A program made the position numbers and the translations under genes. From Klebsormidium nitens (lineage: Eukaryota > Plantae > Klebsormidiophyceae), in assembly GCA_000708835.1 (NCBI GenBank), contig DF237201.1, positions 1 to 64,000 on the forward strand: a stretch of DNA of 64,000 nt, read 5' to 3'. The notes below the pieces were generated by a model. That model searched no databases. It was not told where the DNA came from and worked only from the letters and a program-made list of their open reading frames with translations. Shown here piece by piece: positions 2,106 to 51,885 of the stretch (position 1 is the first letter of the stretch; every line of letters starts with the position of its first letter).

Positions 2106-3095
2106 TTCAGGATGACAAACAGAGAGACTAAGATAGACAGAGTTGAATCAGACCAAATGGTTACTTTGATGGAAAAATGTACAACCAAGCTTTTGCACGA
2201 CGAGCTCGTCAATCAGCGAATGGTCACTCGAAGGTCACTAGCACCAATAGCAAAGGTGCTCTACTGACCATGTACTGAAACGAAACGGTCGAAAGCAGAG
2301 TCGTTTAAGCGGCCTATCGGTTTGTCGCTTCCAATCAAGGTTGTCCATTTGCTCGTCCCGTGCTGAACCCCATGTAGTCATTCGGCTTGACGCCCAGAGT
2401 ATGAGGTGCATAACGTGTAGCGGTGGACGATCTGCATGCTTTCCTCGCTCGTTGAACACGTGTAGCTAAGGGCAGCCGTGGTCGGTGTCCAAAATAACGG
2501 TCCGCTCATGGCACTTCACTGGATTGAATCCGGCGCGATCAAGATCGCGCTTATATAACGCATACTTGGTTGACCTGGTTCTTCCAATCGACCATCAACA
2601 GCATCGCTTGATATTGTCCTGTTGGACCGGCGTGCGGATATGATGCATGACACGGCACTGAATGAGAAGACCTTTGACAATCCATGTTTGCCTAACTACC
2701 ACAATGATACTTGCATCATTGCATCCGAATGCTGCAGACGTAGCTAGGGCCGCCTCACAACGTTAGCGCGAAGCATGACGTGAGAGGCTCGTAACAGTCT
2801 GTATCCATGCGTGCTCTGACAATATATTACACGAAGTTCGACCTGCCAAGTGAACAAAGCCTGAGACACTGTCGTCCTGTACACATCACTGAAAGATGGT
2901 CATTCCACTTTGAAACCTACTTTGAGTTGTATACAAGATGACGTCTCGAATTGAGTTCTCAATGGGCCCACTCTAGTCTAATTGTACGGCTGAGCATCTA
3001 ACTGTTGCTCTGATTGGCGTCCTCAAGCCTATCCTAACTGACTTTCAGCTAACACCGATACTTACAGACCAAGCACTGGCAAGCCAGCCGTAAAT

Positions 3096-20200: not shown

Positions 20201-23200
20201 CCGGACCGTAAACCAAAATGTCTTTTTTTCTTTCTCGCCGCGCAGAGCTGGCAGCTCCGCGACGCCGCCTTCCAAAAGCTCCTCAAGGACCTCGCGGGGG
20301 GGTCATTTCCCGCGGACGGCGCCCCCCTGTTCCGGGGCCTCGTCAAAGCCACGCTCAAAGGCCTAAACGACAAAGTCGCGAGCGTGTTTTTCAACGCCAT
20401 CCCCCTCGTTCGTGGCCTATTCACATCGTACGCTTCGGAAGCGTCCGCGAGGGACGTCCAAAACTGCAGCGGGGAAATTATCGGGGCCCTGTTGGAGCGG
20501 GGGTTGTCGGACTCAAACGCTAGGGTGCAGACTGCGTCGAGCGAGACGTTGCAGTGGCTGGCGGAGCGGAAGGAAGTGGGGCCGGCGGCGGTGGTGGGGC
20601 CGCTGCTCAGACCCGTCAAGAGTCAGGTCAGCGGTCTTCACACTTCAGTTCCTCGTTCTAGCTTTTTTTACTGCGTTTACACGCGCATAGTCCTCCTTTC
20701 ATTACCTTGTTCATGAGTTTCCGGTTCCTGCAGTAGCTGAGACCGTTCAAGAGTTTGGTGTGTTCTCCGGCGATGCTCTCCTGAAAATGTTTCATTTCGA
20801 CGAGCTTTTTGCACGCCCCTTTCAGCACTTGCAGCCAGTAAAAGTCCCTATGCTTTTCTAAGTTTTATTCCACTGAACTCCTTTTGGGTCTGCCCCATCG
20901 TCTTTCTTTGAAAGCGTGCGTAAGAGCCAGAATGGCTGCCGGGAACTTTTCTGTGCCCTTCTTCGTTATTTTGTCGTTTTCGTTTGTTGCCTGTCCTACT
21001 CAACTTTGTTGCAGCCGCAAGCAGTGTGCAAAACTTCGCTCTTGTTCTGAGAGTTTCTGTGCGCCTCACAAAGCACACGAAGCCTCTACGACTTGGCGCG
21101 TCTCGTCATCAGTTTCCCCACAATTTCTCTCCTCCTCCTTCAAATCAATCAGTTTGTGATTCCACGAAGCTTGTCACATCGATCCAAGAACTAGTTTCCA
21201 GATATTCCTGTCTGATTTCTTCCCCACAGGCGCAGTGGAAGATGGTTCTCGGACGCCTGACGCTGCAACAAGCGTTCCTTCAGACGTACGGCCTTTCGCC
21301 CTCGTCCAAAAGCGGCCTTCCCGTCGACCAGCTCATGAAGTTCGTCTGCGATTCGTTCGCGAGCGCAAACGGCGAGGTGCGCGCGCAGGCCACCGCGGTA
21401 ACCGTCCACGTGTACCGGTTGATAGGGACCGGGGTCGAGCGGTACCTGTCCGGTCTGAAACCGGTCGTTCGGGAAGCGCTGTCGTCCGAATTTGAGAAAG
21501 CGGACAGTCAGGCGGCGTCTGGGGGGGTGGTAATCGAAACGAAACGGCGGTCTAGCATAGGGGGGATCAGCGAAGGTAACTTGCAGGGGGCGGGGATCGT
21601 ACCCCCCGGAAGGAAAAAGGCGTCGCAGCCAGGGAAGAGTCAGCCCGGGGGGGATCCCCCGGCCACGAAAAAGGCGAAAGCGCCCCCCCAAAAAAGGAGA
21701 GATCTCGAGGGGGGGCATCCGGAAGGCAGTCCTAGACCCCCGGGGCATTTGGTAAAGAAGCACGCGCATGGGAAGCACTCGGGGAAGCACTCCGGGGAGG
21801 GGGGGGACGAGGGAAGGGGGCATGGGCCAAGGCCGAAGGTAAGGTCGGAAAGCAACAAAAGAGCTTTGTAGTCATGAAAATATGTACCTTCGCTTTGCTG
21901 ATTTCACATGGAGGTGCACGTGCGGAACAAGTAGACCTCTGTTTTTCACAAGTGGAAGAAAGGTGGATAGCGTCCGATGGGCACCGCTCAACCGAGACGA
22001 AGCCTTTGTTAGCGCGTATACGCTTTGCCATACTTTGTGATTAGCAGCTTTCGAGCGGGGGTTTGCCTCCGCTTGTCAAGTGTCACTCTGTTGCCCATGA
22101 TTGGGTTGAAGCTTTGTGTTCCGTTACGGATTGGTGTCTGCTTTTCTCGTCTAGCAGCTCGTATACACAGATCAAAGAATCACGTCTTCAATTCTGCCCC
22201 ACTCTTCATCCAATTGATCTTCAAAGTCACCCCTCACTCCGTTGGATTGATATGTGGCCCTTCTCCAATCTTTGGAAACCGCAAAGCCTACTCGTTTTTT
22301 AAAGTAGATTCGTCACTACTACACCATCAAAACCTCTGTTTGTAGTGTCGCACGATTCTTTGCTCACTGTGTTAACCGTTGCGTAGATCAACCTTATCAC
22401 CAGTTCAATCTCAAAACTTCGAGAATTTACCTTGTCACACACCCCGTCCTTACTCTTTTAACCGCCTCTCCCGCAGACGTCAGCCCACCCCCCGCCCACC
22501 GAAGAAGACGCCGAGGAAGACGGTCCGACCGACACGTGCCAGTTTTGCGGCGTGGTAGACGAGCGGTTTCTTACGGGCGAGACAATGGACCTCCACTTCT
22601 TCCAAGAGTGTCCGATGCTTTGCAGCTGCGACGAGTGCGGCCAAATCGTCGAGATCGCGTCGCTGACGGAACACCGGCTCGAAGAATGCGAGGTGCGAAC
22701 AGTCAGAGAGCGTCATCAAGTGTGTCTTTGAACTGAGTTGAGCTGGTGTCTCAAGGCCGGGTTTTCAGTCCCTCTGCTATATGATGGGTTCCTTCTTGTT
22801 GTCGTTCTGGGGTCCGAATGTTCCTCAGAAGCCGCCTATTCCGACGTTTATGTGCAAGTTTCCTCTTTTCTTCGAGGACGTCGGTTGCTGAGGATCCGCT
22901 CGAGGGGTGCAAGGCCTGTGGGAGTCTTCGTAGAAACCCCTTCTTCGGTGAACGAGGTTTTGTCCCAATGATCTCCTCGGCAGCATGACTGATTTCGCTT
23001 CTGGGCAACGTATTACCAGCCCGTCAATCAAGGCCAACGACATCTCCGCATCGACGTCCGACTAGCAGCAATTAGAAGAAATTGAAGTTCCGTTACGTAA
23101 CCCGTCACAGTTGTTAACAAACGCAGAAGGGCTCCCTTTTACATCTTGAATCCAAGAACGAAGGTCTGCGAAGAACCCCCTGCATCGCCCATGAAATGCG

Positions 23201-38094: not shown

Positions 38095-39719
38095 TAGAGC
38101 TCGCCCGATCGAAAGGGCTAGATGTCCTGCTCTTCCCAGGCCATCTTTCGCACTGGCTGCAGCCCCTTGACGTTGGGGTTCAATTTCTGTCCCTTCAAAA
38201 ACGCAGCCAAAAAGGAACTCAACCGCCTGCTCGCTGTAGCGCCCGATCGAAGGCTCACAAAGGCGGATGCTGTCCGAGTGCTGGAGGTAGCCAAGAAGGC
38301 GGCGTTTACTGTAGACAACATCAAGGCTGCCTTCCGCGCTACAGGTGAGCTGCTAGTGAAATCTTTTGCATGTTAATATATCTGGCTGCTTTGCAAGCTT
38401 TGCTTAAGGTCTGGCACATTCAGAAATTGACAATGTAAAAGCATAATGTCAGCTAGTAAATGCAGAGGCGCCATTTTCTTTGTTGGTTTGGGGAACAGGA
38501 AAGAAACAGGAAGGACTCAAAAGATAAGGTGATGGGTTGCCTGCCTCGGAAACACATTGTACATTCTGGCATTGCTTCAGTGAACCTGCTACAAGATTGA
38601 GTTGCACACTTGTTTCCACATGCTCTTTAAGCAGAGTGGCTGCTGGCAGATCTGTTTCAGGTTCTCAGGTTACTGTGGTCAATGCTGCATAGTAAATTTG
38701 TTCCTCTGACTGGGCGTCGTCAGCGCTTACAACGACTCCAGATGTATCTTGCAAGGGGTTCTCAAAAAGTTTCTTGAATAGTGTGCTGCCACATATCACT
38801 GGGCTGCTAAGTGCATTGCTGTGAGCATTTCTTTTTTGATCAGTAGGTTTATGGTCTTCCAATCAGATGCTTGTTGCCATTCGCAGAGATCTACCCATTC
38901 AACCCACATGAGCTCTGGACGCGAAGTTGGACGCAATTGAAGCGGCACAACGGAAGGCAGGCTGGGAGGAGGAAGAGGCTGTCGCGGGTGAGCCTTTGAT
39001 GCCCACGTCAGGGCTGTCAGCCGTCATAGCTGGGGTTTTAGCAGAGGCCGACCTTGCGGAGGGGGCTGCCGACGAACTCACCGAGATCGGGGAGCCACAG
39101 GAAGCGGCGCTTGGCTTAGCGCCTGAGCGCATGGTAGGGTCAAGAGCTCCTGAGGAGGAAACGGGGAGCAACGAAGCCTGTTCTGAAACGGGGGAGAGCG
39201 AGGGAATCAGGGCCGGGGAAGGGGAGCAGCCACCCGGAGTGGGACAATCGAAGGAGTTGCTGACGTCATCAAGAGAGACCGCGGGGGAAAGGGGGGCTGT
39301 CGGGCCGGCACCAAGAGACGGTCGCGTGATGGGGGCTAGTGTTGCAGCCAGCAACGAGGACCTGCTCGACGACCTCTCCGCTGTGAAGCGTTGGTCGCGC
39401 TTGGAGAAACGACCCAAAGTCGAAGAGCCCCCAAGGGGTGGTGTCAAAACATATTTCTAGTGGTAGCCAGACCCCCGACTTTCCAGATTGACCCCTTAGG
39501 GGCTGTCCCCTGCCACGGAAGATGTTCAAGTTTGGGGGGTCCCAACGCTGCCACCTGCCGCCCCCTCTTTTATCAAAAAAATCTATTGCTTGAAGGGCGG
39601 GGGGGGGGGGGGTGGGGTCTCCGTTCCGCCCGTCCCGTGTTGTCGTCGTACGTACGTCGTACCGTAGTTTTTGTTTTTGGAGTAGTTCGTAACTTAAGTT
39701 TAACGTTCGTCCCGTAACC

Positions 39720-39739
39720 NNNNNNNNNNNNNNNNNNNN
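39720..39739. other. Assembly gap (run of N)
   Basis: About 20 N bases; flanking sequence is low-complexity or low-quality. Confidence 0.98.
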
Positions 39740-40337
39740 GGGGGGGGTTGCCTTCCTCCGGACCCCTTCGATTTGCTGACTAGCCTAGATTTTTTTGTGA
39801 TGTACATTAAGTCTGCCCTAACAGAGCTCATTGGATGGAGACTGCGAACTGACATACCGCATGGAGTGGGAGACCGACTAGAGGATGTAGTAAATGCAAC
39901 CACCCAGATGTATCGCTAGTAAAGCATGCATGTGAGTCCAAATGCTATAAGATTTCAAACAAAACATTAGTCCAATCATTGTACTAATGTGTATCCATAA
40001 GTCTAGGCCCACATGCAGATTCACTTGCATGAAAGGGCGTTAATCAAGCGTCCGTCGCATGGACAAACTTTGGAATTGCATTCGCATCATCAAGGCTAAC
40101 AAGTCCTGATATATCGTCATAATAACTTGACGCTTTTCCTAGTAAGATGGAAAGACTGCGAAATCACTCCAAATTCAAACCATCTAGCCGCCATGCTTTA
40201 GAGATATTCATCTCTTCAAATCGCTTCGGTATGTTATTCACCGTGGTTTGAATGCAACATTTTGATGACATGTAGAAAACCACTAAGCAAACAATCAAAA
40301 CCTGACGCACTTATTACATAAGGAGATTGCTTTAGGA

Positions 40338-41366
40338 TTATCCGCTGCCCTCAAAGCGAGCCGGACGACGAATTGCTCTACCCTTTCTACTCTTCCTAAC
40401 GTCGCTATCCACTTCGGAAAAGCTTTCTAACTCTTGTAGGCTAAGTGCCTCTTCTTCATAGATCAGCATGCAATCAACACACTCCCAATCTACTCCATCT
40501 TCTAGAATCTCCTCTGGAAATAAAACTCCTCGACTCGTTAAACAATCTAGATGAAAGCCCTTATTACAAGAATCACACAACACTTGCACATCTTTGCCCT
40601 CCCCATGGAAAAGATCGCAAATCTCGCACTCCTCTTTCACCCCCGCTACATTCTGCCGCTGAGCGCTGACGCCTTCCACCACCTCCACCACCTCTCTCTG
40701 AAACGAATCCAGGGCCCCCATCAGTCGCTCGAGTTCCTTTGCAGGCAGCCGAAACCCACTCGGATCTATCTCTAGAGCAACATCAACAGCGAACCTTTGG
40801 GCCACATCCTCCCTGTCCTCCCCCTCAACTCGATACAACGATGAATCATCTGCCGAGATTCCTAACCAAACAACCCGTAGGCTCTGCGTGCTATTCCCTA
40901 CAAACCCTTTATCTCGCCCTATCCAAAACATTCTATCATTCCCTACCGCAAGTTCCATCCCCTGCGAGTCCTGCGGTGCCACAAACGCGGAGAAGGTGGG
41001 CTGACGAGCGCGACTGGCCCGAATCTGTGCTGCTCCACTGGTTGGCCCGTCTGTCCCTGATGCAGAAAAAGAGCTGCCAAGCTTTGGTCTAGCTAAGTGT
41101 GACATCAAAAAGCGTAGCCTGGCGAGCGTCTTCCTTTTCGCAAGTTCGCCTCGGAGGCGCGCCCCGGGAAGTTCCGGAGCCCTCGATATGAAGATAAGAA
41201 GCCAAAGGGCTTCAGCAAAAAGGGGTTGGAAGGGCAGACTGAAAGTGGCAAGCGCAGCAAGCATGTCTTTCGAACAGCCGGTGAAGTGCGCACAAGGCCC
41301 CAACCTAGTCAAAGCGTCTTGGGATTGCTGGACTTTCAGCATTCGAGGCGCTACTTGTTCGAGTAA
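40338..41366 (-). CDS. PHD-finger-encoding terminal exon of the Zator-like gene
   Basis: Acceptor tttctgcag at 41367-69, open to the stop at 40338. C4HC3 PHD pattern CEICD...QVLCDSCNKGFHLDC...WECVDC. Confidence 0.75.
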   Translation of the reverse strand, partial: LLEQVAPRMLKVQQSQDALTRLGPCAHFTGCSKDMLAALATFSLPFQPLFAEALWLLIFISRAPELPGARLRGELAKRKTLARLRFLMSHLARPKLGSSFSASGTDGPTSGAAQIRASRARQPTFSAFVAPQDSQGMELAVGNDRMFWIGRDKGFVGNSTQSLRVVWLGISADDSSLYRVEGEDREDVAQRFAVDVALEIDPSGFRLPAKELERLMGALDSFQREVVEVVEGVSAQRQNVAGVKEECEICDLFHGEGKDVQVLCDSCNKGFHLDCLTSRGVLFPEEILEDGVDWECVDCMLIYEEEALSLQELESFSEVDSDVRKSRKGRAIRRPARFEGSG

Positions 41367-41832
41367 CTGCAGAAATCTGCAAATTTGTCACAGTTGTAAC
41401 AGGGTTCTGGATTGAACATCAAGAGCTTCAACAAAACGTGCATCAACGAAACTGTCTGGTGGTTGGTACCATATAAAAGCCAGGCTGACCTTTCTGCTCA
41501 TGCTCGACCGGTAAAACCCCCAGTCATTCCGTTTCGTTTTGCTCCAAGAGCGTTTCCAGGGTCCGCCCCGAAGCCACTCAAGAAACGTCAGACATTCACG
41601 AAAGTCCGCAGGAATTGAATAGTTCCGCTCACTTCACTGCTCCCGTCCAAATATACAGATCGATGCATCAAGAGAATCCAAAATGATACTAGGACCCGAA
41701 AATAGAGCTTCTCCTGTGTCTGACAGGACTGAACACGAAATCGCCGTGAATCAACATGCTTGCAGAAATTGACAAAGGACGAACAAGGCAAGGTTCTCGT
41801 ATATTCTCGACCAATATCCTTTTAAGGCTTAC

Positions 41833-44800
41833 CCTGAGCAGGATCTGCTGAACCTCGGACAGGTGCTGCAGCCCGCTGACGTGCTCTCGCGTCCGCGTGT
41901 AGCTTCTGAATCTGCCACTTGCGGACTTGAGCGATGGCGTCTTTGTCCGAGCAGCACCCGTTAACCCCCCCACAATGAAAGCCTTGACGTCCTCCTCCAT
42001 CCACAGGTAATTCCGGCGCTCCAACTCTTGACGGAGCAGGACAGACGGCAGGCACCTGAATACATAAATTGGTTGTCAATATGCAGATTTCAGCGCACCA
42101 GCATTCAAACGTAAGATTCCTCTGCTGAGGACACAGAACTTAGGTAAAATGATTCTCTCCCTACAGATCACAAGATATACCAGCAACAAGGGCGGCTTCT
42201 ATTAGACATTCGTTTTCACACCCGACGTTCAAAGCAAGCACCGAAAACTCAATTTACAAAAGAGAAAAGTCTCCAACAGTACACAACAAGGACTTTCCAA
42301 CGACTTTTGAAAGCAGATGCGTCATTCACAGAAGTATGAAACTCGCAGACTTTTATGTGACAAATCACCTTAGATATCATACATCAATTACAGACCACGC
42401 AAATGTTGAACTTTTTCAGCGAGGCTTTGACTCAAGCTCTTTCTTATATCGCTCCAGCCCTTCAACATCCTTTCCTATTCCAAGAACTAAATCCTTCCAG
42501 TCAACCAAATACTGTGAAATTCTGAACGGACTGAAAGGACTTCAGCTGGCACATTCAGTCACATGATTCAGCACTTAAGAGAGCTTTACAATTCTCAGCT
42601 TGACACCGGAAAGGAACTCGCCCTTGCACATAAATCATCACCTGTCAACACAATCAAGTTCCCACGGAGGATGTTGCTCGTTCTGCGCTCGTGCTACCGA
42701 GTCCTGGAAATGTCCACCGCTCTCCGTAAATTGGGCGGTCCCCAAGAAGGTCCTCTCTCGGCACCCCGAGTGATCGCAACACGCTGCCGGACTGCCAAGC
42801 CTCCGCCGCGCCTTCTCAAACCCGTCCATGCACTTGAAAAGGCACTTCTCATCCCAGCACGCCAAGAACTCCATTCCGTATCGGCTAAGCAGGGTGTGCT
42901 TTGGGCAGTTCACGAAGTCGAACAACTCGTCAAAACGGGCTGCCTGATCACGATCGGACCAAAGTGCTCTCTTTCTCACGCCCGCTTTGGAGTACGCCCT
43001 CAAGGCCTCCCTCTCGCTGTTCGAAACGTACCCCAGTTCACACGCACACTCGCCGGCACCTCGGCCGCACCCCCCCGCGCACTCTACCGGAAGAGCCTGC
43101 TTGACAGTTAGTGGAAAGCCGCAGAACTCCCCGTCCGACAGCCTGGATCCAACCTCGTCTAGCTCCCACTGCAGGTTTGCCCAAACCTTCCGCTCGTCCA
43201 CCACCCCTCTCTCTAGGTCAACCGCGTCACCGAACGGCTGGGAGTCGATGGGCACGTTACACAGCTCTTTCGTCTCGACTGCATTCAGCCTCTCCGCGCC
43301 CACGTTATAGGCACTCTGCCCCCCAGCATGCGTCCGCTGCGAGCTGTAGCACAACCCCTTTTCTCGGAAGAACAAAGCTTGGGTGTAGATGACCTCTCGG
43401 AACTCCGGGTTGTGGTCAGGCCCTTTGTCGGTGTAGTGATGCCAGGAGCACGAGTCAAACAACTCCGGGTCCCCTTCCCACAGCTGCTCGACATTGTTGA
43501 TCTTCTGAGCTGCCGTCGAGGGATTATATTTCTCCGTTTGGAGGACTGCATAACCCCGGCCCCCGTTTCTACTCACAAGGGCCTGCTTTCCCCCGTGCCG
43601 CTCCAGGGCCCGCCGAGTGCCCGCGAGCCTCTCCCTGTTCATGGCCGTGTCCTCCGTCAACAAGACGATGCTGTCGATGATGATGTTGCTATCTCTGGCC
43701 TTGGAGTGGAGGTCGTGGTCAGGTGATGTCTTCTTGTTGCTGCAGACATGGTAGACGCGGTGCCTGCTGGTTGAGGTGTTGATGTCGGGCTTCACTTTGG
43801 CGTGATCATCGGCAGCCGTGATGGTCGAGCAGGGCGTAGCAAACGCCCGATCTTGGGACGCGCGCCAGTCGACGTGGCAGTGTTTGCCGTCCACGTTTCC
43901 CTCCTTGTCCTCCGCCCTGACCTGGAAAAAGAGGACCGGAAGGGTTTCTGAACTAGCTTGAAAGGGCTTGAGGTTCATACCCAAGCACCGACAGGAGGGT
44001 TGCAAAACATCAAAATGAAAGTCGGTTTCGCAATGAATGTCGATAAGGACCTCAGGCCTGCGCCTTTCTCTGTGAGAATTTGCAGTAGACATTCGTGAAA
44101 ACCCCAACCTTTCCTCATGATGCTGCCTCTAGCTATCATCGGTTTCGAACTTACATCCAATCCGTCCAGAAGTCAGAATCTGTTTTGTTCAATGTTGCCG
44201 CTTGCTATTACCCGATTAGCGTTCAGATCCAGTCTGTCCAGAGAAGTCAGAATCTGTTTTGTTTGATGTTGCCTCTGGCTATCATCAGATTTGGATTCAG
44301 ATCCAATCTGTCCAGAAGTCAGAAACTGTTTTGTTCAATGTTGCCTCTAACTATCATCAGATTAGGGTTCAGATCCAATCTGTACAGGAGTCAGAATCTG
44401 TTTTGTTTGATCACAAGTTCAGATGTGATTTGCACAAAGATTCTACAAACAGCATGCATCAAGATCGACCGGTATCCCCAGCCTTGGAGAAAATAGAAGG
44501 GTCCAAGAAAAAGGGCGAGCGGCCAAGTACGCTAGAGTGTGTATGCTTCAATCGTCCAACAAACAGGATCTGCAAAGGGGGGCAGCAGTTAAATCACCTT
44601 CATGAATCGTTTGCGAAGATAAGCATATCCTAGACAAGTGTTCTCAGAAGATGGAGGAAAGAGGACGCCCGGTAAATTTCCTCATTGGACGCTCTGCTCG
44701 AAAAGAATCCCATCTCAGGTCACTTCCTTGTTGACAGCAAGAAACTTAAGCAATTCAGAAGTTGGTTTGCCACAAGCGGCTTGTAGTGAAACCAGGATCA

Positions 44801-46897
44801 AATTGCATATGCCCATTCTGTCCACCGCAAGTGTGGCTGAACTAACTCCGGGGACTTGGAGCAATTGCAAAAGTGTCTCCCCACTGAAGCAAAGCGCGTT
44901 TGCATGAATAGTGGTTGACCTCAACTCCCTCCTTTCCACATACAAAATTGATATACATTTTCTTTAGAGGAACCAAAACCCTTTCCAATGGCGCAAACAT
45001 CAATGTTCCTCACCTTGTGCATGCGCACGTCAGCTAGTGGAACGTGGAGCCTCCCAGCAATGGACCGGCAGTTGGCAGGGTGCATGGCCCGGTGCACCGT
45101 CTTTCTGGAGACACTTATCAGCTCCCCAGTCCGGCAGCACCGGCACTCCAGGACATACAACCAGATCCGGGTGACAGTGGAGCGCCCGCCTCGGTGCAGA
45201 GTAGAATCCTGCCTTCGCCTCTCCGCCTTCCCTCCATCTCCATCCCCCAAGTTCTCGACCGCCCTCTCTATGTGCTCTCCCAAGCAACACGCATGGGCCA
45301 GAATCTTAGAAGGACGGCCCCCCTCTCTCCTCTTCCGGAGCATGAACCTTGCCACCTTCAACTCAGCCCTCCTGGTGTCCCTCTGCTTCCTCCTCTGATA
45401 GGCGCTTGGCTCCGTTTTATATGCAACCGACCGCATTAGCTGATCAAGGTCAGCCATATAAAACTCAGCACCCGACAACTCCTCCGTGATCGCCGCAATG
45501 CTTTCCCGCTTCCACCCATACTGCTTGACTACAAAGTCAGCCCCCGTCAGCTGCGCAAGAAGGCCTTTAAAGACCCTGCGGTCCTGCTCCTTGCTGAGGA
45601 ACCGGAGGTATTTCAGGATGGGGAGCTCCCGGGCCTTCTGAGCTGTCTCCTTTGCTTGCTCACGCACCATCTTGGCCAGAGTGGCAAACTGGAGGATGTG
45701 GTCATGTGCTTGGACAGGCCTCGCGCAGAGCAACACTACCTCCTTGCAGCCTTCCCTCGCCTGAACAGTGATGCTGATAAGAGGAAGGTATCGAAGCAGA
45801 AAAGCCAGCAGCCGACTTGGCCGGCCTCTGAACTTCTGTGACACCCCTCCCCGCCCGGTTGCCCCTTCCCCCTCCAACCCCCCCATCCCATCCAGATCCT
45901 GGAAACGCTCCAACACCTCTTCCACCCCCGCTTTCTCTCCCCTCAAAGAGCCCCCTGCAGCCCCGGACCCCTCGGCAACTCCCGCTCGTCCAAAATTTCG
46001 TAGCCCCTCCAACCCCTCTGCCCCCACAGAAGCCCCTCCTAGCCCCTCTTCGTCCCATTCAGCCATGAGATCAGCTGCGTCATCCAGGGAAAAAAACCCA
46101 GTTTCGCTCAGGTCAACCGCAGCTGCTATCTCAAGAAGAGACGTCAACTTAGCTTTGTCCCGCGCAACCGGCTTCCAGGGCTCCGCCCACTCTTCCCACG
46201 TCTTCTTCTTCTGCACCCTCCGTTTCTGGAGCGCTTCACTTTCCTCCTTGTCTATAAGCTGGCCGATAAACTTGATTGCCTTTTTAAGACTAACCGCATC
46301 ATCCAGCGCCCGGCACATATTCACACCCCTATCGACGTAGGTCTTCTCAGAGGCCCTATCCTTCAGGTGACGCTTGTACCTAGTTTCCAGTCTAACTACA
46401 GGAGGGAACTTGCTAGCTGCCAATTCCCTCCACTTTTTCCGGATGCGGGACGCAGCCAGCTCCCGAAAAATCCCTTCCCCTTCTATCAAGGAGGACGTAT
46501 AAACCAGACTCCATTGCCCCCTTGAGCCCTGGAAGTGCACCGTAGCCACCAGCGCCTTTACGCTCTGCACCCCCCATCCAACGCTTAGAAACTGAGGGGG
46601 CACCGCAAAACCCAAGTCCAGCCCTTCCAGCTCTTCTACCTTGCATCCCACCACCGCCGCAAACAATCTAGCTTGAAACTCATCATCACTCCCCTCTTCT
46701 TCTCCACAATCTTTGCCCTCCTCAGACCACCGCCTTTCCCCGCGTCCCCCAACCTTTCAATTCGTCTCCTCCTCCTCCCCCTCTTCCCTCTCCCCCTCGT
46801 TGTCCTCCTGCTCGACTTCCGCCTCATCCTCCTCGTCCCCTTCCGAGGGTTCCTCTTCACTGCTCTCAATGTCTTGAACGGCCGCCTTCTTCTTCTT
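41833..46897 (-). pseudogene. Zator-type DDE transposase core (one in-frame TGA at 46757-59)
   Basis: Exons 46897-45014, 43921-42642 and 42055-41833. Motifs GRPSK...ERRRQ...VSRKTVHRAMHP...GRLHVP, AADDHAKV, PDHDL, TDKGPDHNPEF, THAGGQSAYNVGAERL, PFGDAVD...NL, LACWDEKC, DRCLPS match my recollection of Zator/TP36-like transposases. Confidence 0.8.
44117..44412. repeat. Minisatellite, ~72 bp x 4, in an intron of the Zator-like gene
   Basis: Units start at 44133, 44205, 44279 and 44351 (CTATCATCAGATT...ATCCAATCTGTCCAGAAGTCAGAATCTGTTTTGTT...). Confidence 0.9.
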
Positions 46898-48077
46898 CTG
46901 CACAAAAATGGTAGCACAGTTTGGGTAAGTTGCTGCACTTTTCAAGACCAACCACTTCAACTTGCAGGTCTTCCTCCTGCTCCGAGCGTAACCAGGGCAG
47001 ATACATAGATCCCTTCCGAGCGCTGCAGAAGTTTAGAAACCCCAATTACGTCCAAGACACAAGGCACTGACAAGTCATATTTCTTTATTGTGACGGCCAT
47101 TATCAGATCCTGTCTTCACGCATTTTCAGCAGCGACATGCTGCGGTCACATCCCTATTCAGTCCTCTCGCTTCCCCATTGCAGCAGACATCATCGAACTC
47201 TGATTGTATACAGCAACCGATGCAAATTTGAAAGCAATCCGGCGTCCACTCAGCTGGACTATCTGCACTGAACTTTAGCGTCCACATCAATACAAACATT
47301 ATTGGTCTGTGATTTACTGCAGCGATGCAGACCTTACCAGCTCGTCCACATCGCTGCAGACACCACTAGACCATGTCCATCTGCACCAAAGCGGACCTGA
47401 TAAATCTGTTACTGTTTGCCTCGATGCAGACAAGCTTAGACTAAACTGTGCAGCGATGTGGATCTAATCAGGAAAGGGACGTCTGCATCGCTGGAGACGT
47501 CATCGGACTTTCATCTTCTGCAGTTATGCCGACGCCTGACCTTGTGATCAGATCTGCATTGAGCACTCCAAACATGACGGACAAATAGATAACTGAAGCA
47601 ACGCAAACTTGACCAGATTTGAGTGTCCGCAAAGCTGCAAACATCATCCACGCACACGTGTTCCTAACACCGCTCAACTGCTGCTTGAATATCACCATAC
47701 TCTTGACCTTGCAGAGCTGCAAACCGTGTCAGACATCAACGGATTACCAGCAACAAACACCTCCTTGAAGCTCGAATGACCAGAAAACTGCAAAAGCCTT
47801 TCATGTCTATGTTAAGGGTTTCAAGAAGTATCCATGAACTCCAAAGCCGTAACGTTGTTGAGAGTGATGAGACTTTAGCACGTCAGACCGCTTGAGCATC
47901 TGTTAAAAAAGATGCACGTTCGCTGTCAAGACTTAAATCTTAAGTGGAGGTCTGAGTGCTTTTGAAGCTATCTAATTGGTCTATACTGTGCAGTAATCTC
48001 GATCTGGCCCTCTCCAAAAGTAGGCCAGCATAATATCTGCAGAGCCCCAAAAGCATGGACAAAACCTCAATTCTCAC

Positions 48078-50386
48078 TAGCTTTGCTTGCATCTCCTTGA
48101 CCAACTCCTCCATCTCTTGGATATTCGCCTCAGCTTTCCCCCCCTTCCCTCGGGGGCCTCCCGCAATCTTCTTCCGCTTTGCCTGCTGCACCATTCCCGC
48201 TTTCACCGTCCGCTTCTTCGTACTCTCCACCCCTGTCCCCTTGCCTTTCTGCGCTTTTGCCACTTCTTTCTCCTTCGCCTCCAACAACGCCCCCACGATT
48301 CCAGGCCCCAACTTCGCAATCCGCACTCCGAGGTCCTTCGCAAGCTTTGCAGCCCGCTCCGCTTCTGTCTGAAGGTTGATCAGGACGTCGAAGTAGGGAG
48401 GCGAGCGGATCAGAAACGCGACTCCCTCCTTCCAATTGAGCTGCTTCTGTAAAAGCATGAGAAGTGTCTATCAGAAATTGAACTCTCTTATACTACGGTC
48501 AAAAATAAAGGCTGTTTTCCTAGCAGGACATGCCGGCTTTGTACCTCCAGCATCTGCAAAGACTGCGGCCTCGAGCAAGAGAGTTAGTGCATCTTGAAGG
48601 GCATGCCTTGCTACAAAGAAGTCCAAGAGAAGTTCTGCCTTGGCGCCCATGCCAATGGTGCATTTTGCTGTGTACAGTGGGCGCCAATTTCCCATTTGTT
48701 TTGGTTGGCACAATATGGAAGAAAGTGAAGGATAAGTCACGGCTTCCTTGTTGCAGCAGCGTTATCGCCTGAGCACCGTTTCCGATGCTCATAGAGATGC
48801 AGATTTGAATAGCGACGTGGTCCTTCGTGGCCTGCAGGAGTCCTAGAAAATGGCTGCAGATCTTGATTCTGGCTCTGCATCAGATGCGGATCTGTCACTG
48901 GCCTCAGAAACGAAATATCCCAGAACTGGGCAGGATCTTGCAGCCAAGGACTCAAAAGAGCAGCTCAGTGTGGCTCATCTGCCTCTGGTTTTAGTTACAA
49001 ACCTGCCAATGCCTTTAGCTCATCCTCAACCTATGTCTGTGGCAGCTAGCGCATTCGTCCATGTCAAGGTCAACTCGAGTGCAACCCATGTTAAGGTCCA
49101 GCGTGTCACTTCTGGTAAAGCCATAGATCATGCACCGACAGAAGGGAAGGGTTTTAGCATCGGCACCAAGTGGTCCATCAGTTGGTTCAAATGTCTGCCA
49201 ATATGCAGTTATTACAGGGCTGGAGACAATCGGTGCAGAGGGCCTGGAGCTTGGCTCTCAACAGATCGAAAGAAGGCGGCTGACTTGAGAAGCACATCTG
49301 CCATGGTGGCTTTGAATCAGCAATTGTTGAATTGCCTTGCACTAAAGACACGCAAGAAGGAAAGAAGAGAATGCTTCTTACCAGAAGTGTGTCCAGTTGA
49401 CTCTGCACCAGGGCGATGGTGGTCGTCATCCGCTCCAATCTCTCTCCTCTTTGATCCTTGCTCAACTGAACCCCCTTTCCACTTGCCCGTGCAATCCGAA
49501 TTGCCTTCTCGTAGTCGTCAACCTTGTCACAGAGAGTTCTGTTTCTTGCATCCGTTCCTGCTGGGCTTGTCTCAAAGACCACCTTCATTGCAGATGCAAC
49601 AGCCAGCACGTCAGCCTGCCTGTCAAGAGCATAGCTCTTGATGGTGGAATCGTCCTGCACTCCGAACCCAGGCTCGTCGCAGACTGCCTTGAGCTGCGCA
49701 GCAGCATCCTTTGACGTCTGCAGCTGAATGGCCGCATACCTTGAACTCCCTGCAGCAGTGCTCCTGGATGCACCGCCGAGCCCAAAGCGCTTGGCATCAG
49801 CAACGGAACGGGACTTCTTGAGGGCAGAAGTGACCCAAGGAGCTGCCTTCTTTACATCAAACTTCGCAAGACTCGCCAGCGGTCCACTCTTCACGGCCCG
49901 TTGCAGTGCGAGCTGCTCTGCTCTGTAGTCAGATCTACTCAGAGGCGCCAACAGATTGTGAGTTACTCGCGTGCCCTTGGTGTGAATCAAGTCCCAGCAC
50001 ACCTGGCACAATGCCTGGTCGCACTCCCCACAGTACCCAACCGCGTCCTTCCCATGAGGACAGACCGAAAACGACCCTTCACAGGGACAGGTGGGTTTCT
50101 CCACAACAACTTTGGCATGGTTCTGATTGTCACCCCACTTGTGGGGCACCTCCCAGCATGGTGAGCAGAAGCTTGCCACACAACTGGCGCACGAGAATTC
50201 TGCCTCAGCCTCCTTGCAGACAGCACACTTGGGAGGTGGATCCTTTGCCACCCCTCCCGCTGCGAATTCTGGACTGCCCTCATTCTCTCTTCCCCGAGGA
50301 TCAGCATCCTGAGCTCCAGTTGCTGAGAAATCCATGACCGCCACCTTCAGACAAAATAAACGTGTACCCGTTCTGTAAGCAGACAC
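48078..50386 (-). CDS. Double B-box zinc-finger plus coiled-coil coding exons inside the Zator-like element
   Basis: Exon 50386(or ~50335)-49382 with CAVCKE...CASCVASFCSPCWEVPH...H and CPH...YCGECDQALCQVCWDLIH...H, donor GTAAGA. Basic coiled exon 48446-48078 with AG and GTGAG boundaries. Both phase 0. Confidence 0.72.
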
Positions 50387-51136
50387 CTAACAGGCCGTTG
50401 AATATGCAGTTCCGGGCTTATCAGGGCGCCAAGATTTTCTCTCTTCAACAAGCCAGACAAAAGCAGTCCTGACTCCTGAGACTGAGTCCTGAATGCAAGC
50501 CCAGCAGACCAGCAGGGAATTTCGAACTGTTTCATTATTTCGATAATTTATATCAGTAATGAGTACTGCTCTACCGGTACATTCACCTATTCAAAGAGCT
50601 CAATTCTAATTAGATTCCATGGAGGCCGGCACCAAGAAATAATTAGTTACTCCACAATTTTTCGGGGTGGTGGGGGTGGGGGGGGGTTACTACCAACGCT
50701 GATCTGAGGCAAACAAAAAACGGAATGTTGGATGAACGGGGGGTGGGGGGGCCTGCCCCCTTAGGCAAACGTTCTCGAATGAATTGGGGGATTTACGGGG
50801 GCTGGGGCCTGTCCCCTGTCCAAAAAACCGCCTGCGGCGCTCAAGGGGGGGCCTGTCCCCTGTCCCCAAAGTCCGAGGGGTCTGGCTACCACTGGAAATA
50901 TGTTTAGACACCACCCCCAACCCGTCTTTACGCATACAGCCCTCCAACCCACAGTCGCACACCTTGGCCGCCGTGCAGGGGGTGCTGTGTCTTCCCCCCA
51001 AGCCAAAAGCAGGGAAGAAGTCTCGGGCGGTCACTGTGGTGACAGCCCTGTTGATCACCAGTGACGAGTGGCAGGAAGCAGTGCGGCAGCAAGAGGAGGA
51101 AGAGAAGCGGAAGAAAGCGGAGGAGGCAAAGCGTGG

Positions 51137-51885
51137 GGGCGGTAGCACAGTTAGTCCGCCCATTTACGAAGCAAGCGCGTTTGTCGAAAGTTCTCGGATT
51201 TTGGTGTTTGATAGTGCATTAGAACCGCCTCGACGAGTACAATATATTTCGTCCCGGCCGGGGTTCGAAAATTTGCCGTCTGGCGGCCGCGCGACGCGGC
51301 CGCAAATTCTGACATTCACACGTGCGGCTGTTGCGGGGTTTGCCGCACGGTCATTTTAACATTTTTTGACCGGTTTTAGGGGCCGTGCGTGTCGACCCGA
51401 CCCTAGGCTACGGCCTGAAACACTCATATTCGTGAAAATTTGAAGTGCCCGGTTATAGTGCAAATGGCCCTATTATCAGGTTAACACGGAATACCTAGGC
51501 AGTGGTTCCAAGTGACGTCAGTGTCAGATTTGCATGTGAAGGGTGTCAGTCGACGCGGAATCTTTGGGGCTTTCCAACGAATCCGAAGGCGGCCGAATCT
51601 GACAAGATCTCAAAAAGTTATTAGTTGAAATCATTGAAAATGTCGAAAGGTGGCCCGATGGACGGTCGGGTCACCGAGCGCGACAATTCGGCCGCCGGTT
51701 GCTGACGTCATCAACCGAGCGGCGCGACCCTTGAGGTCGGTAGTTCGATCCATGAAAGTGACATACGAACTTTGAATCACTACTTGTGGACCAAATGCCA
51801 CAAAGTTATCGCCCTTTGAAGATTGGTTTCACTGTTTTTTCCAACATGGACGCTGAAAATGGGCGAACTAACCGTGCTACCGCCC
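51137..51885. mobile_element. MITE, 749 bp, 4 bp TSD GTGG
   Basis: TIR GGGCGGTAGCAC(A/G)GTTAGT(C/T)CGCCCATTT (29 bp, 2 mismatches). GTGG at 51133-36 and 51886-89. Removal restores ...EEAKR|GEKAAASARAKE. Confidence 0.9.

What the first reader, a model, noticed from the sequence alone, without database searches (positions are those of the whole stretch)
39435..50917. Giant Zator-like transposon whose exons join into a B-box / B-box / DDE / PHD protein of ~1,900 aa
Seen: 41 bp TIRs starting GGGG, a CAA TSD, and six minus-strand exons (50386-49382, 48446-48078, 46897-45014, 43921-42642, 42055-41833, 41366-40338). Their GT-AG phases are all compatible (0,0,0,2,0), with a single in-frame TGA. Candidate catalytic residues are intact (DDHAK ~43805, DKGPD ~43430, AER ~43290). 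Knowledge: GG termini, a 3 bp TSD and these motifs fit the Zator superfamily, which I recall mainly from animals and protists and as compact elements. Inference: a green-lineage Zator that has captured a chromatin reader (PHD) and B-box fingers, possibly for target choice or silencing evasion. Alternatively the B-box exons are a separate passenger gene.
Basis: partly seen in the sequence, partly recalled or inferred. Interest (0 to 1): 0.85.

Follow-up and report, generated by a model that had tools for sequence, protein, structure and literature searches.

The report
Large Zator-type transposon in a green alga
This is a real 11.5-kb cut-and-paste DNA transposon of the rare Zator superfamily, sitting in the genome of a Klebsormidium-like green alga, and its unusually long six-exon transposase gene also carries two B-box zinc fingers and a likely chromatin-reading barrel-plus-PHD module, although this copy has two disabling lesions as assembled.

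Summary
A 41-nt terminal inverted repeat (39/41 matched) bounds 39435-50917, flanked by CAA on both sides. The N gap (39720-39739) lies in non-coding subterminal DNA, 598 bases past the stop codon, so reading frame is not at issue.

The DDE core has no Pfam hit. Its family profile aligns to a Glomeromycota transposase family at 99.2% probability (E 3e-19). Those fungal proteins hit only PF07592 (TP36) and share the printed motifs of Zator-1_HM, so the Zator call is supported. The host is green: a neighbouring gene is 84% identical to Klebsormidium nitens.

Relatives in metagenome contigs share the TIR, the B-box exon inside the TIR, and the C-terminal PHD. An intronless relative fuses core and PHD in one ORF.

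- Exon 5 carries a -1 frameshift in a G7 run, which was missed.
- The exon 6 acceptor supported by homology is 41056, not 41366.
- The TGA in exon 3 is specific to this copy.
- The conceptual protein is about 1,810 aa, not about 1,900.
- As assembled, this copy cannot make the full protein.

Verdict: a new variant of a known kind, of moderate interest.

The parts
39432..39434 (.). Left copy of the 3-bp target site duplication (CAA)
   Evidence: the flanks read CAA|GGGG... and ...CCCC|CAA. Lengths of 2, 4 or more do not match.
39435..39475 (+). Left terminal inverted repeat (the 3' end of the element relative to its gene)
   Evidence: 41 nt, 95%; the same terminus, GGSGYGRTGTCWAAACA..TTTCYAGTG, sits at the 3' end of relatives L002/L003 and L006/L007.
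39720..39739 (.). Assembly gap in non-coding subterminal DNA, flanked by G runs
   Evidence: It lies 598 bases beyond the stop codon and 244 bases inside the left TIR, so it is not in any exon.
40338..41056 (-). Exon 6 as supported by homology (linker, beta-barrel, helix, PHD, basic tail; stop TAA at 40340-40338)
   Evidence: the L006 ORF aligns from 41003 to 40353. The acceptor ctctttttctgcatcag|GG at 41058-41057 fits the phase-1 donor of the conserved exon 5 frame.
40749..40997 (-). Five-stranded beta-barrel upstream of the PHD (BAH/Tudor-like)
   Evidence: strands at residues 20-102, pLDDT about 75-85; conserved FW..G..V.V.WL..D..Y..E; the best, but weak, Foldseek matches are EBS BAH-PHD, PHF1/MTF2 Tudor-PHD and UHRF1 TTD-PHD.
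40470..40628 (-). PHD finger (C4HC3: C-x2-C-x13-C-x2-C-x4-H-x2-C-x20-C-x2-C)
   Evidence: PF00628, 23.4 bits, cut-off 24. Relatives pass the cut-off: P0003 29.5 bits and L006 25.4 bits. All eight ligands are invariant. Foldseek matches PHD fingers at rmsd about 3.1-3.3 A.
41057..41366 (-).
   Evidence: No counterpart in L002, L006 or P0003. However, it is open in frame and its GC (0.53) is above intron level, so the 41366 acceptor remains an alternative.
41833..42055 (-). Exon 5 (conserved peptide RCLPS..LRxELERRxYLW...NGCC..D..QV.KW.[IL]QKL.AD.RAR)
   Evidence: The phase-2 acceptor gives R-CLPS, as in L002, L006 and L033.
41965..41971 (-). G7 homopolymer where the reading frame shifts by -1 relative to all relatives
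   Evidence: the first half of exon 5 matches relatives in one frame and the second half in another. This is either a true lesion or a homopolymer assembly error.
42642..43921 (-). Exon 4: RNase H-like DDE catalytic core plus a Cys-rich region after the core
   Evidence: 31 relatives among 1.84 billion representatives. (AF2 pLDDT 77, beta-beta-beta-alpha-beta-alpha-beta-alpha core). (only RNase H-fold matches). (hhalign 99.2% to Zator-like fungal transposases).
43796..43813 (-). First catalytic motif, ADDHAK (D1)
   Evidence: It aligns with the invariant QDDKAK of the fungal family and with SQDDKARV of Zator-1_HM.
43415..43432 (-). Second catalytic motif, TDKGPD(HNP) (D2)
   Evidence: It aligns with VDGGPDENP of the fungal family and of Zator-1_HM.
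43283..43300 (-). Third catalytic motif, (SAYNV)GAERLN (E), 45 residues after D2
   Evidence: It aligns with QSAYNPVER of the fungal family, where the spacing is 44.
44120..44407 (.). 72-bp x 4 tandem repeat inside intron 3
45014..46897 (-). Exon 3: acidic stretch, a conserved region of unknown fold, then the region preceding the core (GGRPS...HIERAVEN...CCRTGE..SRK.VHRAMHP)
   Evidence: The junction 45014|43921 reads ..ADVRMHK|VRAEDKEGN, continuous with the intronless P0003 (..ADIRCTRVRKDDHDEH) and with the fungal family. The match to the fungal N-terminal region on its own is weak but collinear.
46757..46759 (-). In-frame TGA within the acidic stretch of exon 3
   Evidence: L005 reads through the equivalent acidic stretch without a stop, so the stop is specific to this copy.
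48078..48446 (-). Exon 2: Lys-rich, probably coiled-coil linker
   Evidence: 52% identity to L005 over 65 residues, at the equivalent position. Splice sites are good.
49382..50335 (-). Exon 1 from ATG 50335: two B-box zinc fingers (about 50227-50117 and 50065-49958) plus 190 further residues
   Evidence: PF22586 45.2 bits, PF00643 39.1 bits, two stretches. One search gives the Cys pairs. It is 45% identical to the L005 B-box ORF (PF22586 28.6 bits), which lies just inside the L005 5' TIR.
50877..50917 (-). Right terminal inverted repeat (the 5' end of the element relative to its gene)
   Evidence: The L005 5' terminus is homologous over about 105 nt.
50918..50920 (.). Right copy of the 3-bp target site duplication (CAA)

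Best explanation
The interval 39435-50917 is one autonomous-type cut-and-paste DNA transposon of the Zator superfamily. This superfamily comprises the eukaryotic relatives of bacterial TP36/ISAzo13 transposases. The element belongs to a divergent lineage found in Klebsormidium-like streptophyte algae.

Its single six-exon gene on the minus strand encodes, in the family's ancestral form, a transposase of about 1,810 aa. The order of parts is: two B-box zinc fingers, a Lys-rich and acidic linker, a conserved region of unknown fold, the Zator N-terminal region and RNase H-like DD45E core, a Cys-rich region, and finally a BAH/Tudor-like beta-barrel and a PHD finger.

Inferred mechanism:
- The protein recognises the conserved 41-nt TIRs (GGGGTGGTGTCWAAACA...).
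- It excises the element with the DDE site and reinserts it with a 3-bp staggered cut, giving the CAA duplication.
- The C-terminal barrel-PHD cassette most likely tethers the transposition complex to a histone-tail state and so biases where it lands.
- The B-boxes most likely mediate oligomerisation or contact with a host partner.

Shown here: the TIRs, the TSD, homology of the core, presence and conservation of the domains, and shared architecture in relatives. Inferred: catalysis, the DNA-binding region, and the roles of the B-box, barrel and PHD.

This copy carries a TGA in exon 3 and a -1 frameshift in a G7 run in exon 5. It is therefore inactive as assembled, unless these are assembly errors.
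For: Ends:
- The TIR is 39/41 matched and unique in the window.
- The duplication is CAA on both flanks.
- The same terminus is conserved at the ends of relatives whose cores are 54-72% identical.
- Only exons and TIRs align at the DNA level between the window and L005/L002.

Superfamily:
- The core family is rare: 31 hits among 1.84 billion representatives.
- Its profile aligns over 259 columns to a Glomeromycota family at probability 99.2%, E 3.1e-19.
- 8 of 8 tested fungal members hit only PF07592 DDE_Tnp_ISAZ013 (E 1e-5 to 1e-3).
- The fungal consensus (SQDDKAKVPLG, DHDF..KLIPSV, VDGGPDENPRH, APGQSAYNPVER) matches the printed Zator-1_HM core (SQDDKARVPIG, DHDF..KLIPSV, VDGGPDENPRY, APGRSAF) in the supplement of PMC3985635.
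- PMC5751038 reports Zator elements in fungi mainly in Rhizophagus, with single occurrences in Basidiomycota.
- The AF2 model has an RNase H-like topology, with D1 on strand 1, D2 after strand 5, and E on the following helix.

One gene:
- Intronless P0003 joins the exon 3 C-terminal half, the core and a PHD in one 1,226-aa ORF.
- The exon 3/4 and 4/5 junctions are continuous with relatives.
- L005 has the order TIR, B-box ORF, exon 2, exon 3, core.
- No Met precedes the conserved part of exon 3 in the window or in L005, and L005 reads through the acidic stretch.

Reader cassette: all ligands are invariant, and the model has a barrel plus a PHD whose best matches are BAH-PHD and Tudor-PHD histone readers.

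Host: 84% identity to a Klebsormidium nitens protein.
Against: - The window core has no direct Pfam or NCBIfam hit, even at E<=10, so the link to Zator/TP36 is through one intermediate family.
- No reference Zator protein could be aligned by a tool. The Zator-1_HM comparison is by eye, on printed motifs.
- Only one complete copy is available, so the 3-bp duplication rests on n=1 (chance 1/64).
- There is no transcript evidence for any junction. The B-box exons could still be a separate or alternatively spliced unit.
- The Foldseek matches for both models are weak (no E<=0.001), and the barrel-PHD model has a mean pLDDT of only 62.
- The more distant P0003 lineage shows no B-box.
- The left TIR is separated from all exons by an assembly gap.
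Confidence: 0.8

Rival explanations
1. The B-box exons (1 and 2) form a separate passenger gene carried inside the transposon, and the transposase is translated from its own start.
For: The as-assembled sequence ends the B-box reading frame at the TGA (codon 488), which would give a free-standing B-box protein. The distant P0003 lineage has core plus PHD with no detectable B-box. There is no RNA evidence.
Against: L005 reads through the acidic stretch where the window has its TGA. Exons 2 and 3 have conserved coding sequence upstream of any Met, in both the window and L005. All three junctions are phase 0 with strong splice sites. The order of exons 1-2-3 and the intron positions are conserved at 45-54% protein identity.
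Confidence: 0.2
2. The element is not a Zator but a separate, so far unnamed superfamily-level lineage of the IS630/TP36-like transposases that merely shares the catalytic motifs.
For: No direct hit to PF07592 or any other model. Identity to the fungal Zator-like family is only about 23%. The domain set and the size are unlike the transposases of about 700 aa in that family. No phylogeny was made.
Against: The profile match covers the whole core, in order, at E 3e-19. The flanking N-terminal region is collinear. The D-D-E spacing is almost the same (45 against 44). The 3-bp duplication is the Zator hallmark.
Confidence: 0.12
3. The C-terminal PHD-like finger binds the transposon's own DNA ends (as the Cys-rich domain of piggyBac transposase does) rather than histone tails, so it is not a chromatin reader.
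For: Cys-rich C-terminal fingers are described as a feature of piggyBac-related transposases (abstract of PMC8086355). That the piggyBac domain is PHD-like and binds the element's own DNA ends is from my own recollection. Fungal Zator-like transposases end in C2H2 fingers, which are typical DNA binders, at the same place. The window PHD scores just below the Pfam cut-off.
Against: The finger sits directly after a beta-barrel, an arrangement whose best structural matches are histone-reading BAH-PHD and Tudor-PHD cassettes. The single PHD matches at rmsd about 3 A are histone-tail readers (MTF2, BAZ2B, CHD4, DPF).
Confidence: 0.25
4. The TIR pair is an assembly chimera: the scaffold join at the N gap links the left end of one copy to the body of another, so the 11.5-kb unit is not one insertion.
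For: The left TIR and 244 bases next to it are separated from every exon by the gap. The assembly has homopolymer trouble nearby.
Against: The 3-nt flanks match (1/64 by chance). Orientation is correct. The stop-to-terminus distance is like that of relatives.
Confidence: 0.06

Closest known systems
Zator superfamily of eukaryotic DNA transposons (reference Zator-1_HM of Hydra; family A.28 in Majorek et al. 2014, PMC3985635), and the Zator elements of Rhizophagus (PMC5751038)
   Same: 3-bp target duplication and terminal inverted repeats. The RNase H-like DDE core has the same motif series (DDxAK; DHD..IxS; DxGPDxNP; SAYNxxER), with about 45 residues between the second D and the E. The region before the core is collinear. 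The profile match to the Glomeromycota members is 99.2% probability, E 3e-19.
   Different: Identity to the fungal members is only about 23%, and there is no direct PF07592 signal. The gene has six exons and a product of about 1,810 aa, against about 700-760 aa in the fungal family. It has an N-terminal double B-box, and a C-terminal barrel plus PHD in place of the fungal C2H2 fingers. The host is a streptophyte alga. The paper library held no report of Zator in green algae.
Bacterial TP36 / ISAzo13 transposases (Pfam PF07592, DDE_Tnp_ISAZ013)
   Same: They are the presumed prokaryotic ancestors of Zator (recalled from Bao et al. 2009; PMC7386202 says the same). The fungal bridge family hits this model and no other transposase model.
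   Different: The window protein itself gives no hit. The bacterial elements are compact, intron-less, and lack B-box and PHD modules.
RAG2 / ProtoRAG (Transib) PHD, and chromodomain-bearing LTR-retrotransposon integrases
   Same: A chromatin-reader module attached to DDE recombination machinery, thought to guide where DNA is cut or inserted. This is an analogy of mechanism only.
   Different: The DDE superfamilies are unrelated. In RAG the PHD is on a separate subunit.
Plant-type double B-box proteins (BBX/CONSTANS-like), ANCHR-like B-box (PF22586)
   Same: Two tandem N-terminal B-boxes with the spacing C-x2-C-x8-C-x2-C-x4-C-x2-C-x4-H-x7-H.
   Different: No CCT domain, and the B-boxes are fused to a transposase. 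No close sequence relative among solved structures. The origin from a host gene was not traced.

Membership tests
Zator superfamily | 3-bp target site duplication | tested here: met
   CAA on both flanks, and only length 3 matches. This rests on one complete copy only. Relatives are cut by contig ends, so their duplications could not be read.
Zator superfamily | Transposase homologous to Zator transposases (core motifs of Zator-1_HM / family A.28) | tested here: met
   hhalign of the window family (A3) against the Glomeromycota family (A4) gives probability 99.2%, E 3.1e-19, over 259 columns. The A4 consensus and the window share the printed Zator-1_HM motifs. The comparison with Zator-1_HM itself was by eye, not by a tool.
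Zator superfamily | Detectable relationship to bacterial TP36 (Pfam PF07592) | tested here: inconclusive
   No hit for the window core or its close relatives at E<=10. 8 of 8 members of the bridging fungal family hit PF07592 at E 1e-5 to 1e-3, below the gathering score.
Zator superfamily | Intact DDE triad on an RNase H-like fold | tested here: met
   D in ADDHAK, D in TDKGPD and E in GAERLN are conserved across the family. The AF2 model has pLDDT 77 and RNase H-like strand/helix order, and all Foldseek matches, though weak, are RNase H-fold nucleases and transposases.
Zator superfamily | Groups with reference Zator elements in a DDE-core phylogeny | not tested
Bao et al. 2009 and Yuan & Wessler 2011 are not held.
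B-box zinc finger (PF00643 / PF22586) | Score above the curated cut-off, and the Cys/His ligand pattern | tested here: met
   PF22586 45.2 bits (cut-off 27) and PF00643 39.1 bits (cut-off 24.1), two stretches each. The ligands are conserved in L005, which itself scores 28.6 bits.
PHD finger (PF00628) | C4HC3 ligand pattern and score above the cut-off | tested here: met
   The pattern is complete and invariant in 5 sequences. The window scores 23.4 bits, just under the cut-off of 24. Relatives pass: 29.5 and 25.4 bits. Foldseek matches PHD fingers at rmsd about 3 A.
PHD finger (PF00628) | Binds a histone H3 tail state | not testable with these tools
   This needs peptide binding assays. The motif before the Zn-binding His (GFH/GWH) and the Foldseek neighbours (BAZ2B, CHD4, UHRF1, DPF) hint at a reader of unmodified H3K4. 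That is inference only.
BAH / Tudor-like histone-reader barrel | Fold match to BAH or Tudor domains | tested here: inconclusive
   A five-strand barrel is modelled at pLDDT about 75-85. The best matches are EBS BAH-PHD (E 5.8e-3) and PHF1/MTF2 Tudor-PHD (E 1.5e-2), and none reaches E<=0.001. No Pfam hit.

The most novel reading that the evidence does not exclude
A Zator transposase that chooses its landing sites by reading chromatin. A fused BAH/Tudor-like barrel plus PHD cassette would tether the transposition complex to a particular histone-tail state, and an N-terminal double B-box would assemble the complex or recruit a host partner. This would be the first chromatin-guided member of the IS630/Tc1/Zator group, and a streptophyte-algal lineage of a superfamily otherwise known from animals, protists and Glomeromycota.
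Probability: 0.3. Interest if true: 0.65.

Novelty: new variant of a known kind. Interest (0 to 1): 0.5.

Why it matters
Zator is one of the rarest and least studied cut-and-paste superfamilies. Here its core family had only 31 relatives among 1.84 billion protein representatives.

A lineage in a Klebsormidium-like alga extends the known hosts into the green lineage. It shows a Zator transposase more than twice the usual size, with accessory modules at both ends.

A transposase fused to a barrel-PHD cassette is a natural test case for chromatin-guided insertion, with parallels in RAG2 and chromoviral integrases. The conserved TIRs and the near-intact gene give a concrete starting point for asking whether Zator elements can move in an assay.

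For genome annotation, the element shows that standard Pfam-based screens miss this family entirely.

Tried and rejected
- Pfam at E<=10 on every ORF and on all 32 members of the core alignment, and NCBIfam: nothing for the core.
- Word-indexed profile search with A1: only close relatives.
- Foldseek of the core model against the PDB: only weak RNase H-fold matches. Mos1 had the best TM (0.27), which is not discriminating.
- Sequence and profile searches of the PDB: nothing.
- Scan of metagenome contigs for the conserved TIR core: 23 single matches, none with matching flanks, about the number expected by chance by my own rough estimate. No new copies were found.
- Search for a partner TIR in L006 and for TIRs around the Rhizophagus gene in L004: none, or only AT-rich noise.
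- Logan contigs L031-L034, checked in the hope of spliced transcripts: they are genomic.
- Bao et al. 2009 and Yuan & Wessler 2011 are not held.
- A tool alignment against the printed Zator-1_HM core was left out, because that sequence has no reference and should not be typed in.
- The 1,227-aa ORF nested in L002 is unrelated to P0003.
- Considered and rejected: CACTA, PIF/Harbinger and Academ, which also have 3-bp duplications (recalled, not tested here), because the core is homologous to Zator-type proteins; and an rve-type integrase (similar ER.N motif), because there is no rve hit and the spacing differs.

Full report
**1. The ends and the gap**

The inverted-repeat search finds one outstanding pair in the region: 39435-39475 against 50877-50917, 41 nt, 95% complementary. 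The 23-nt terminal pattern occurs only at these two places in the 64-kb window, with 0 expected from shuffles.

The bases outside the repeats are CAA on the left and CAA on the right. Only a duplication length of 3 gives a match.

The N run at 39720-39739 is the only gap in the window. It lies between the left repeat and the stop codon of the last exon (40338-40340), flanked by G runs, so no exon or frame depends on it. It does leave open whether the left repeat is physically joined to the rest. Two observations favour continuity:
- The flanks match over 3 nt (1/64 by chance).
- The distance from stop codon to terminus is 903 bp, close to the roughly 980-1,210 bp seen in relatives.

Only a spanning read can prove it.

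**2. The gene**

The longest minus-strand ORFs of the whole window lie inside the repeats.

Pfam finds two B-box stretches in exon 1 (PF22586 45.2 bits, PF00643 39.1 bits) and a PHD finger in the last exon (23.4 bits against a cut-off of 24). It finds nothing for the 1,100 residues between them.

**3. Relatives**

An exhaustive phmmer search with the exon 4 ORF found only 31 proteins among 1.84 billion representatives. They come from JGI, ENA and Logan assemblies, plus distant hits in Gigaspora and Rhizophagus. Fetching their contigs gave the key comparisons.

- **P0003 / P0032 (locus L001).** An intronless ORF of 1,226 aa, 41% identical in the core. It contains, in order, the counterpart of the exon 3 C-terminal half, the core, and a C-terminal PHD of 29.5 bits. 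Core and PHD are therefore one protein in a distant member. The window's exon 3/4 junction (..ADVRMHK|VRAEDKEGN..) is continuous with it.
- **L005** (core 72% identical). It has a terminus homologous to the window's right repeat. Following it are a B-box ORF (45% identical, PF22586 28.6 bits) and then counterparts of exon 2, exon 3 and the core.
- **L002/L003 and L006/L007.** They have the core, exon 5 and the PHD exon, followed about 1 kb later by a terminus homologous to the window's left repeat.

Across these loci the termini all begin GG and share GGSGYGRTGTCWAAACA..TTTCYAGTG, while the base outside varies. This fixes the element boundary independently of the window. At the DNA level only exons and termini align between the window and L005/L002, which is the pattern expected for constrained coding sequence and transposase binding sites.

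**4. Superfamily**

Three motifs are conserved in all relatives, including the fungal ones: ADDHAK, TDKGPDHNP and SAYNxGAER.

The AF2 model of exon 4 (pLDDT 77, pTM 0.79) has an RNase H-like order of strands and helices, with the three acidic residues in the expected places. Foldseek returns only RNase H-fold proteins (Argonaute PIWI, endonuclease V, IstA, Mos1, retroviral integrase), all weak.

The decisive link came from two sources.

First, the supplement of Majorek et al. 2014 (PMC3985635) prints the core of Zator-1_HM, their family A.28. It also lists PF07592 in the domain legend of that family's Amphimedon member.

Second, a search with the Gigaspora hit P0030 returned 225 Glomeromycota proteins. 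Their alignment consensus carries the Zator-1_HM motifs almost letter for letter:

| Motif | Glomeromycota consensus | Zator-1_HM |
|---|---|---|
| D1 | SQDDKAKVPLG | SQDDKARVPIG |
| between D1 and D2 | DHDF..KLIPSV | DHDF..KLIPSV |
| D2 | VDGGPDENPRH | VDGGPDENPRY |
| before E | APGQSAYNPVER | APGRSAF |

Eight of eight members tested hit PF07592 and no other transposase model (E 1e-5 to 1e-3). PMC5751038 independently reports Zator elements in fungi mainly in Rhizophagus, with single occurrences in Basidiomycota.

A profile of the window's own family, built without any fungal sequence (A3), aligns to the fungal profile (A4) over 259 columns covering the whole core, at probability 99.2% and E 3.1e-19. 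The region before the core is collinear, but weak on its own. The spacing from the second D to the E is 45 residues, against 44 in the fungal family.

The caveats are:
- There is no direct PF07592 hit.
- No phylogeny was made.
- The comparison with Zator-1_HM itself is by eye.

**5. Corrections to the gene model**

- **Start codon.** The first Met of exon 1 is at 50335, at the same place as in L005.
- **The TGA at 46759-46757.** It lies in an acidic stretch. L005 reads through the equivalent stretch into the conserved part of exon 3, so the stop is specific to this copy.
- **Upstream exons are needed.** Neither the window nor L005 has a Met before the conserved part of exon 3, and the Mets in exon 2 are not at conserved positions. 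The start therefore has to come from exon 1, which favours one B-box-transposase gene over a passenger gene.
- **Exon 5 frameshift.** Its second half, however, is conserved in a different frame. Three independent relative sequences, each seen in two samples, read RCLPS..YLW....NGCC..D..QV.KW..QKL.AD.RAR in one frame. The window switches frame at a run of seven G (41971-41965). This is a -1 frameshift, either real or a homopolymer error in the assembly.
- **Exon 6 acceptor.** In the conserved frame the donor at 41833 is phase 1. A strong acceptor at 41058-41057 (exon start 41056) restores the frame, and it gives a linker of the same length class as the continuous L006 ORF.

The revised model is:

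| Exon | Coordinates (minus strand) |
|---|---|
| 1 | 50335-49382 |
| 2 | 48446-48078 |
| 3 | 46897-45014 |
| 4 | 43921-42642 |
| 5 | 42055-41833 |
| 6 | 41056-40338 |

The total is 5,429 nt as assembled, for a conceptual product of about 1,810 aa. As assembled, translation stops at codon 488 and, if that is read through, at codon 1608, before the barrel and PHD.

The last-exon frame stays open for 110 codons upstream of 41056, and that stretch has GC 0.53, above the 0.41-0.49 of the introns. Open runs of 80-119 codons do, however, occur in the other introns. RNA data are needed to decide.

**6. Accessory modules**

- **B-boxes.** The spacing is C-x2-C-x8-C-x2-C-x4-C-x2-C-x4-H-x7-H, twice, with the ligands conserved in L005. 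The spacing resembles the plant double-B-box type; this is my own recollection, not a test.
- **PHD.** The pattern is C4HC3, and all eight ligands are invariant in five sequences.
- **Barrel.** Upstream of the PHD the alignment shows a conserved FW..G..V.V.WL..D..Y..E pattern. AF2 models it as a five-stranded barrel at pLDDT about 75-85 (whole-model mean 62).
- **Fold matches.** Foldseek's best matches are two-domain histone readers: Arabidopsis EBS BAH-PHD, PHF1/MTF2 Tudor-PHD and UHRF1 TTD-PHD. Single PHD fingers also match at rmsd about 3 A (MTF2, BAZ2B, CHD4, DPF). None reaches E<=0.001.

The reading as a chromatin-reader cassette is therefore an inference. The rival, a DNA-binding finger as in piggyBac-type transposases (PMC8086355), stays open. 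It is worth noting that fungal Zator-like proteins end in C2H2 fingers at the same position.

The B-box is shared by the window and L005 but was not detected in the P0003 lineage. The PHD is shared by both lineages, so it seems to be the older addition.

**7. Host and context**

The window also holds a Band 7/SPFH gene, a CEP104-like TOG gene and a UVR-motif ORF. The Band 7 ORF is 84% identical to Klebsormidium nitens KFL_006590020, and 90-92% identical to unnamed metagenome proteins. The host is therefore a Klebsormidium-like streptophyte alga, and 'green lineage' is right.

The paper library holds no report of Zator in green algae, nor of a Zator with PHD or B-box domains. Absence from this library is not proof of novelty.

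**8. Verdict**

This is a real transposon, correctly assigned to Zator, in a green alga, with a large multi-domain transposase gene whose architecture is shared by relatives.

It is a new variant of a known kind. Its interest lies in the host range, the size, and the fused reader-like modules, whose function is untested.

Noticed in passing
window 51137-51885: A 749-bp MITE-like unit just right of the element. It has 29-nt inverted repeats (51137-51165 / 51857-51885, 93%) beginning GGGCGGTAGC, and the flanks read GTGG on both sides, a possible 4-bp duplication.
   Followed up: partly
window 44120-44407: A 72-bp tandem repeat, four copies at 81% identity, inside intron 3 of the transposase gene.
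   Followed up: no
L002:2661-10061: The related copy in L002 has a 7.4-kb insertion in an intron of the DDE core. The insertion carries a 338-aa ORF with a ZF-HD_dimer match (28.1 bits) and a 1,227-aa ORF with no Pfam hit that is unrelated to P0003.
   Followed up: partly
L005:8222-9983 and L002, versus window 43700-43760: Relatives have an extra intron in the catalytic core (after ..HRVFQ) that the window copy lacks. Intron content therefore differs between family members.
   Followed up: no
window 41057-41387: The last-exon reading frame stays open for 110 codons upstream of the homology-supported acceptor, with GC 0.53, above intron level. This may be chance, an alternative acceptor (41366), or a remnant of coding sequence.
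   Followed up: partly
window 39476-39520 and 50800-50876: Four of the five GGGGACAGS motifs in the window lie within about 110 bases of the element's ends, all on the same strand (0 of 100 shuffles reach 5). L005 has the motif near its terminus too. These may be subterminal binding sites.
   Followed up: partly
window 1027-4007 and 17595-21868: Host genes in the window: two Band 7/SPFH ORFs (one 84% identical to Klebsormidium nitens), a UVR-motif ORF, and CEP104-like TOG-domain exons.
   Followed up: partly
window 50921-51360 (+): The right flank holds an ORF-like stretch (..KKSRAVTVVTALLITSDEWQEAVRQQEEEEKRKK..). When the element is removed in silico, an open frame crosses the insertion point, so the element may sit in an exon or in another repeat.
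   Followed up: no
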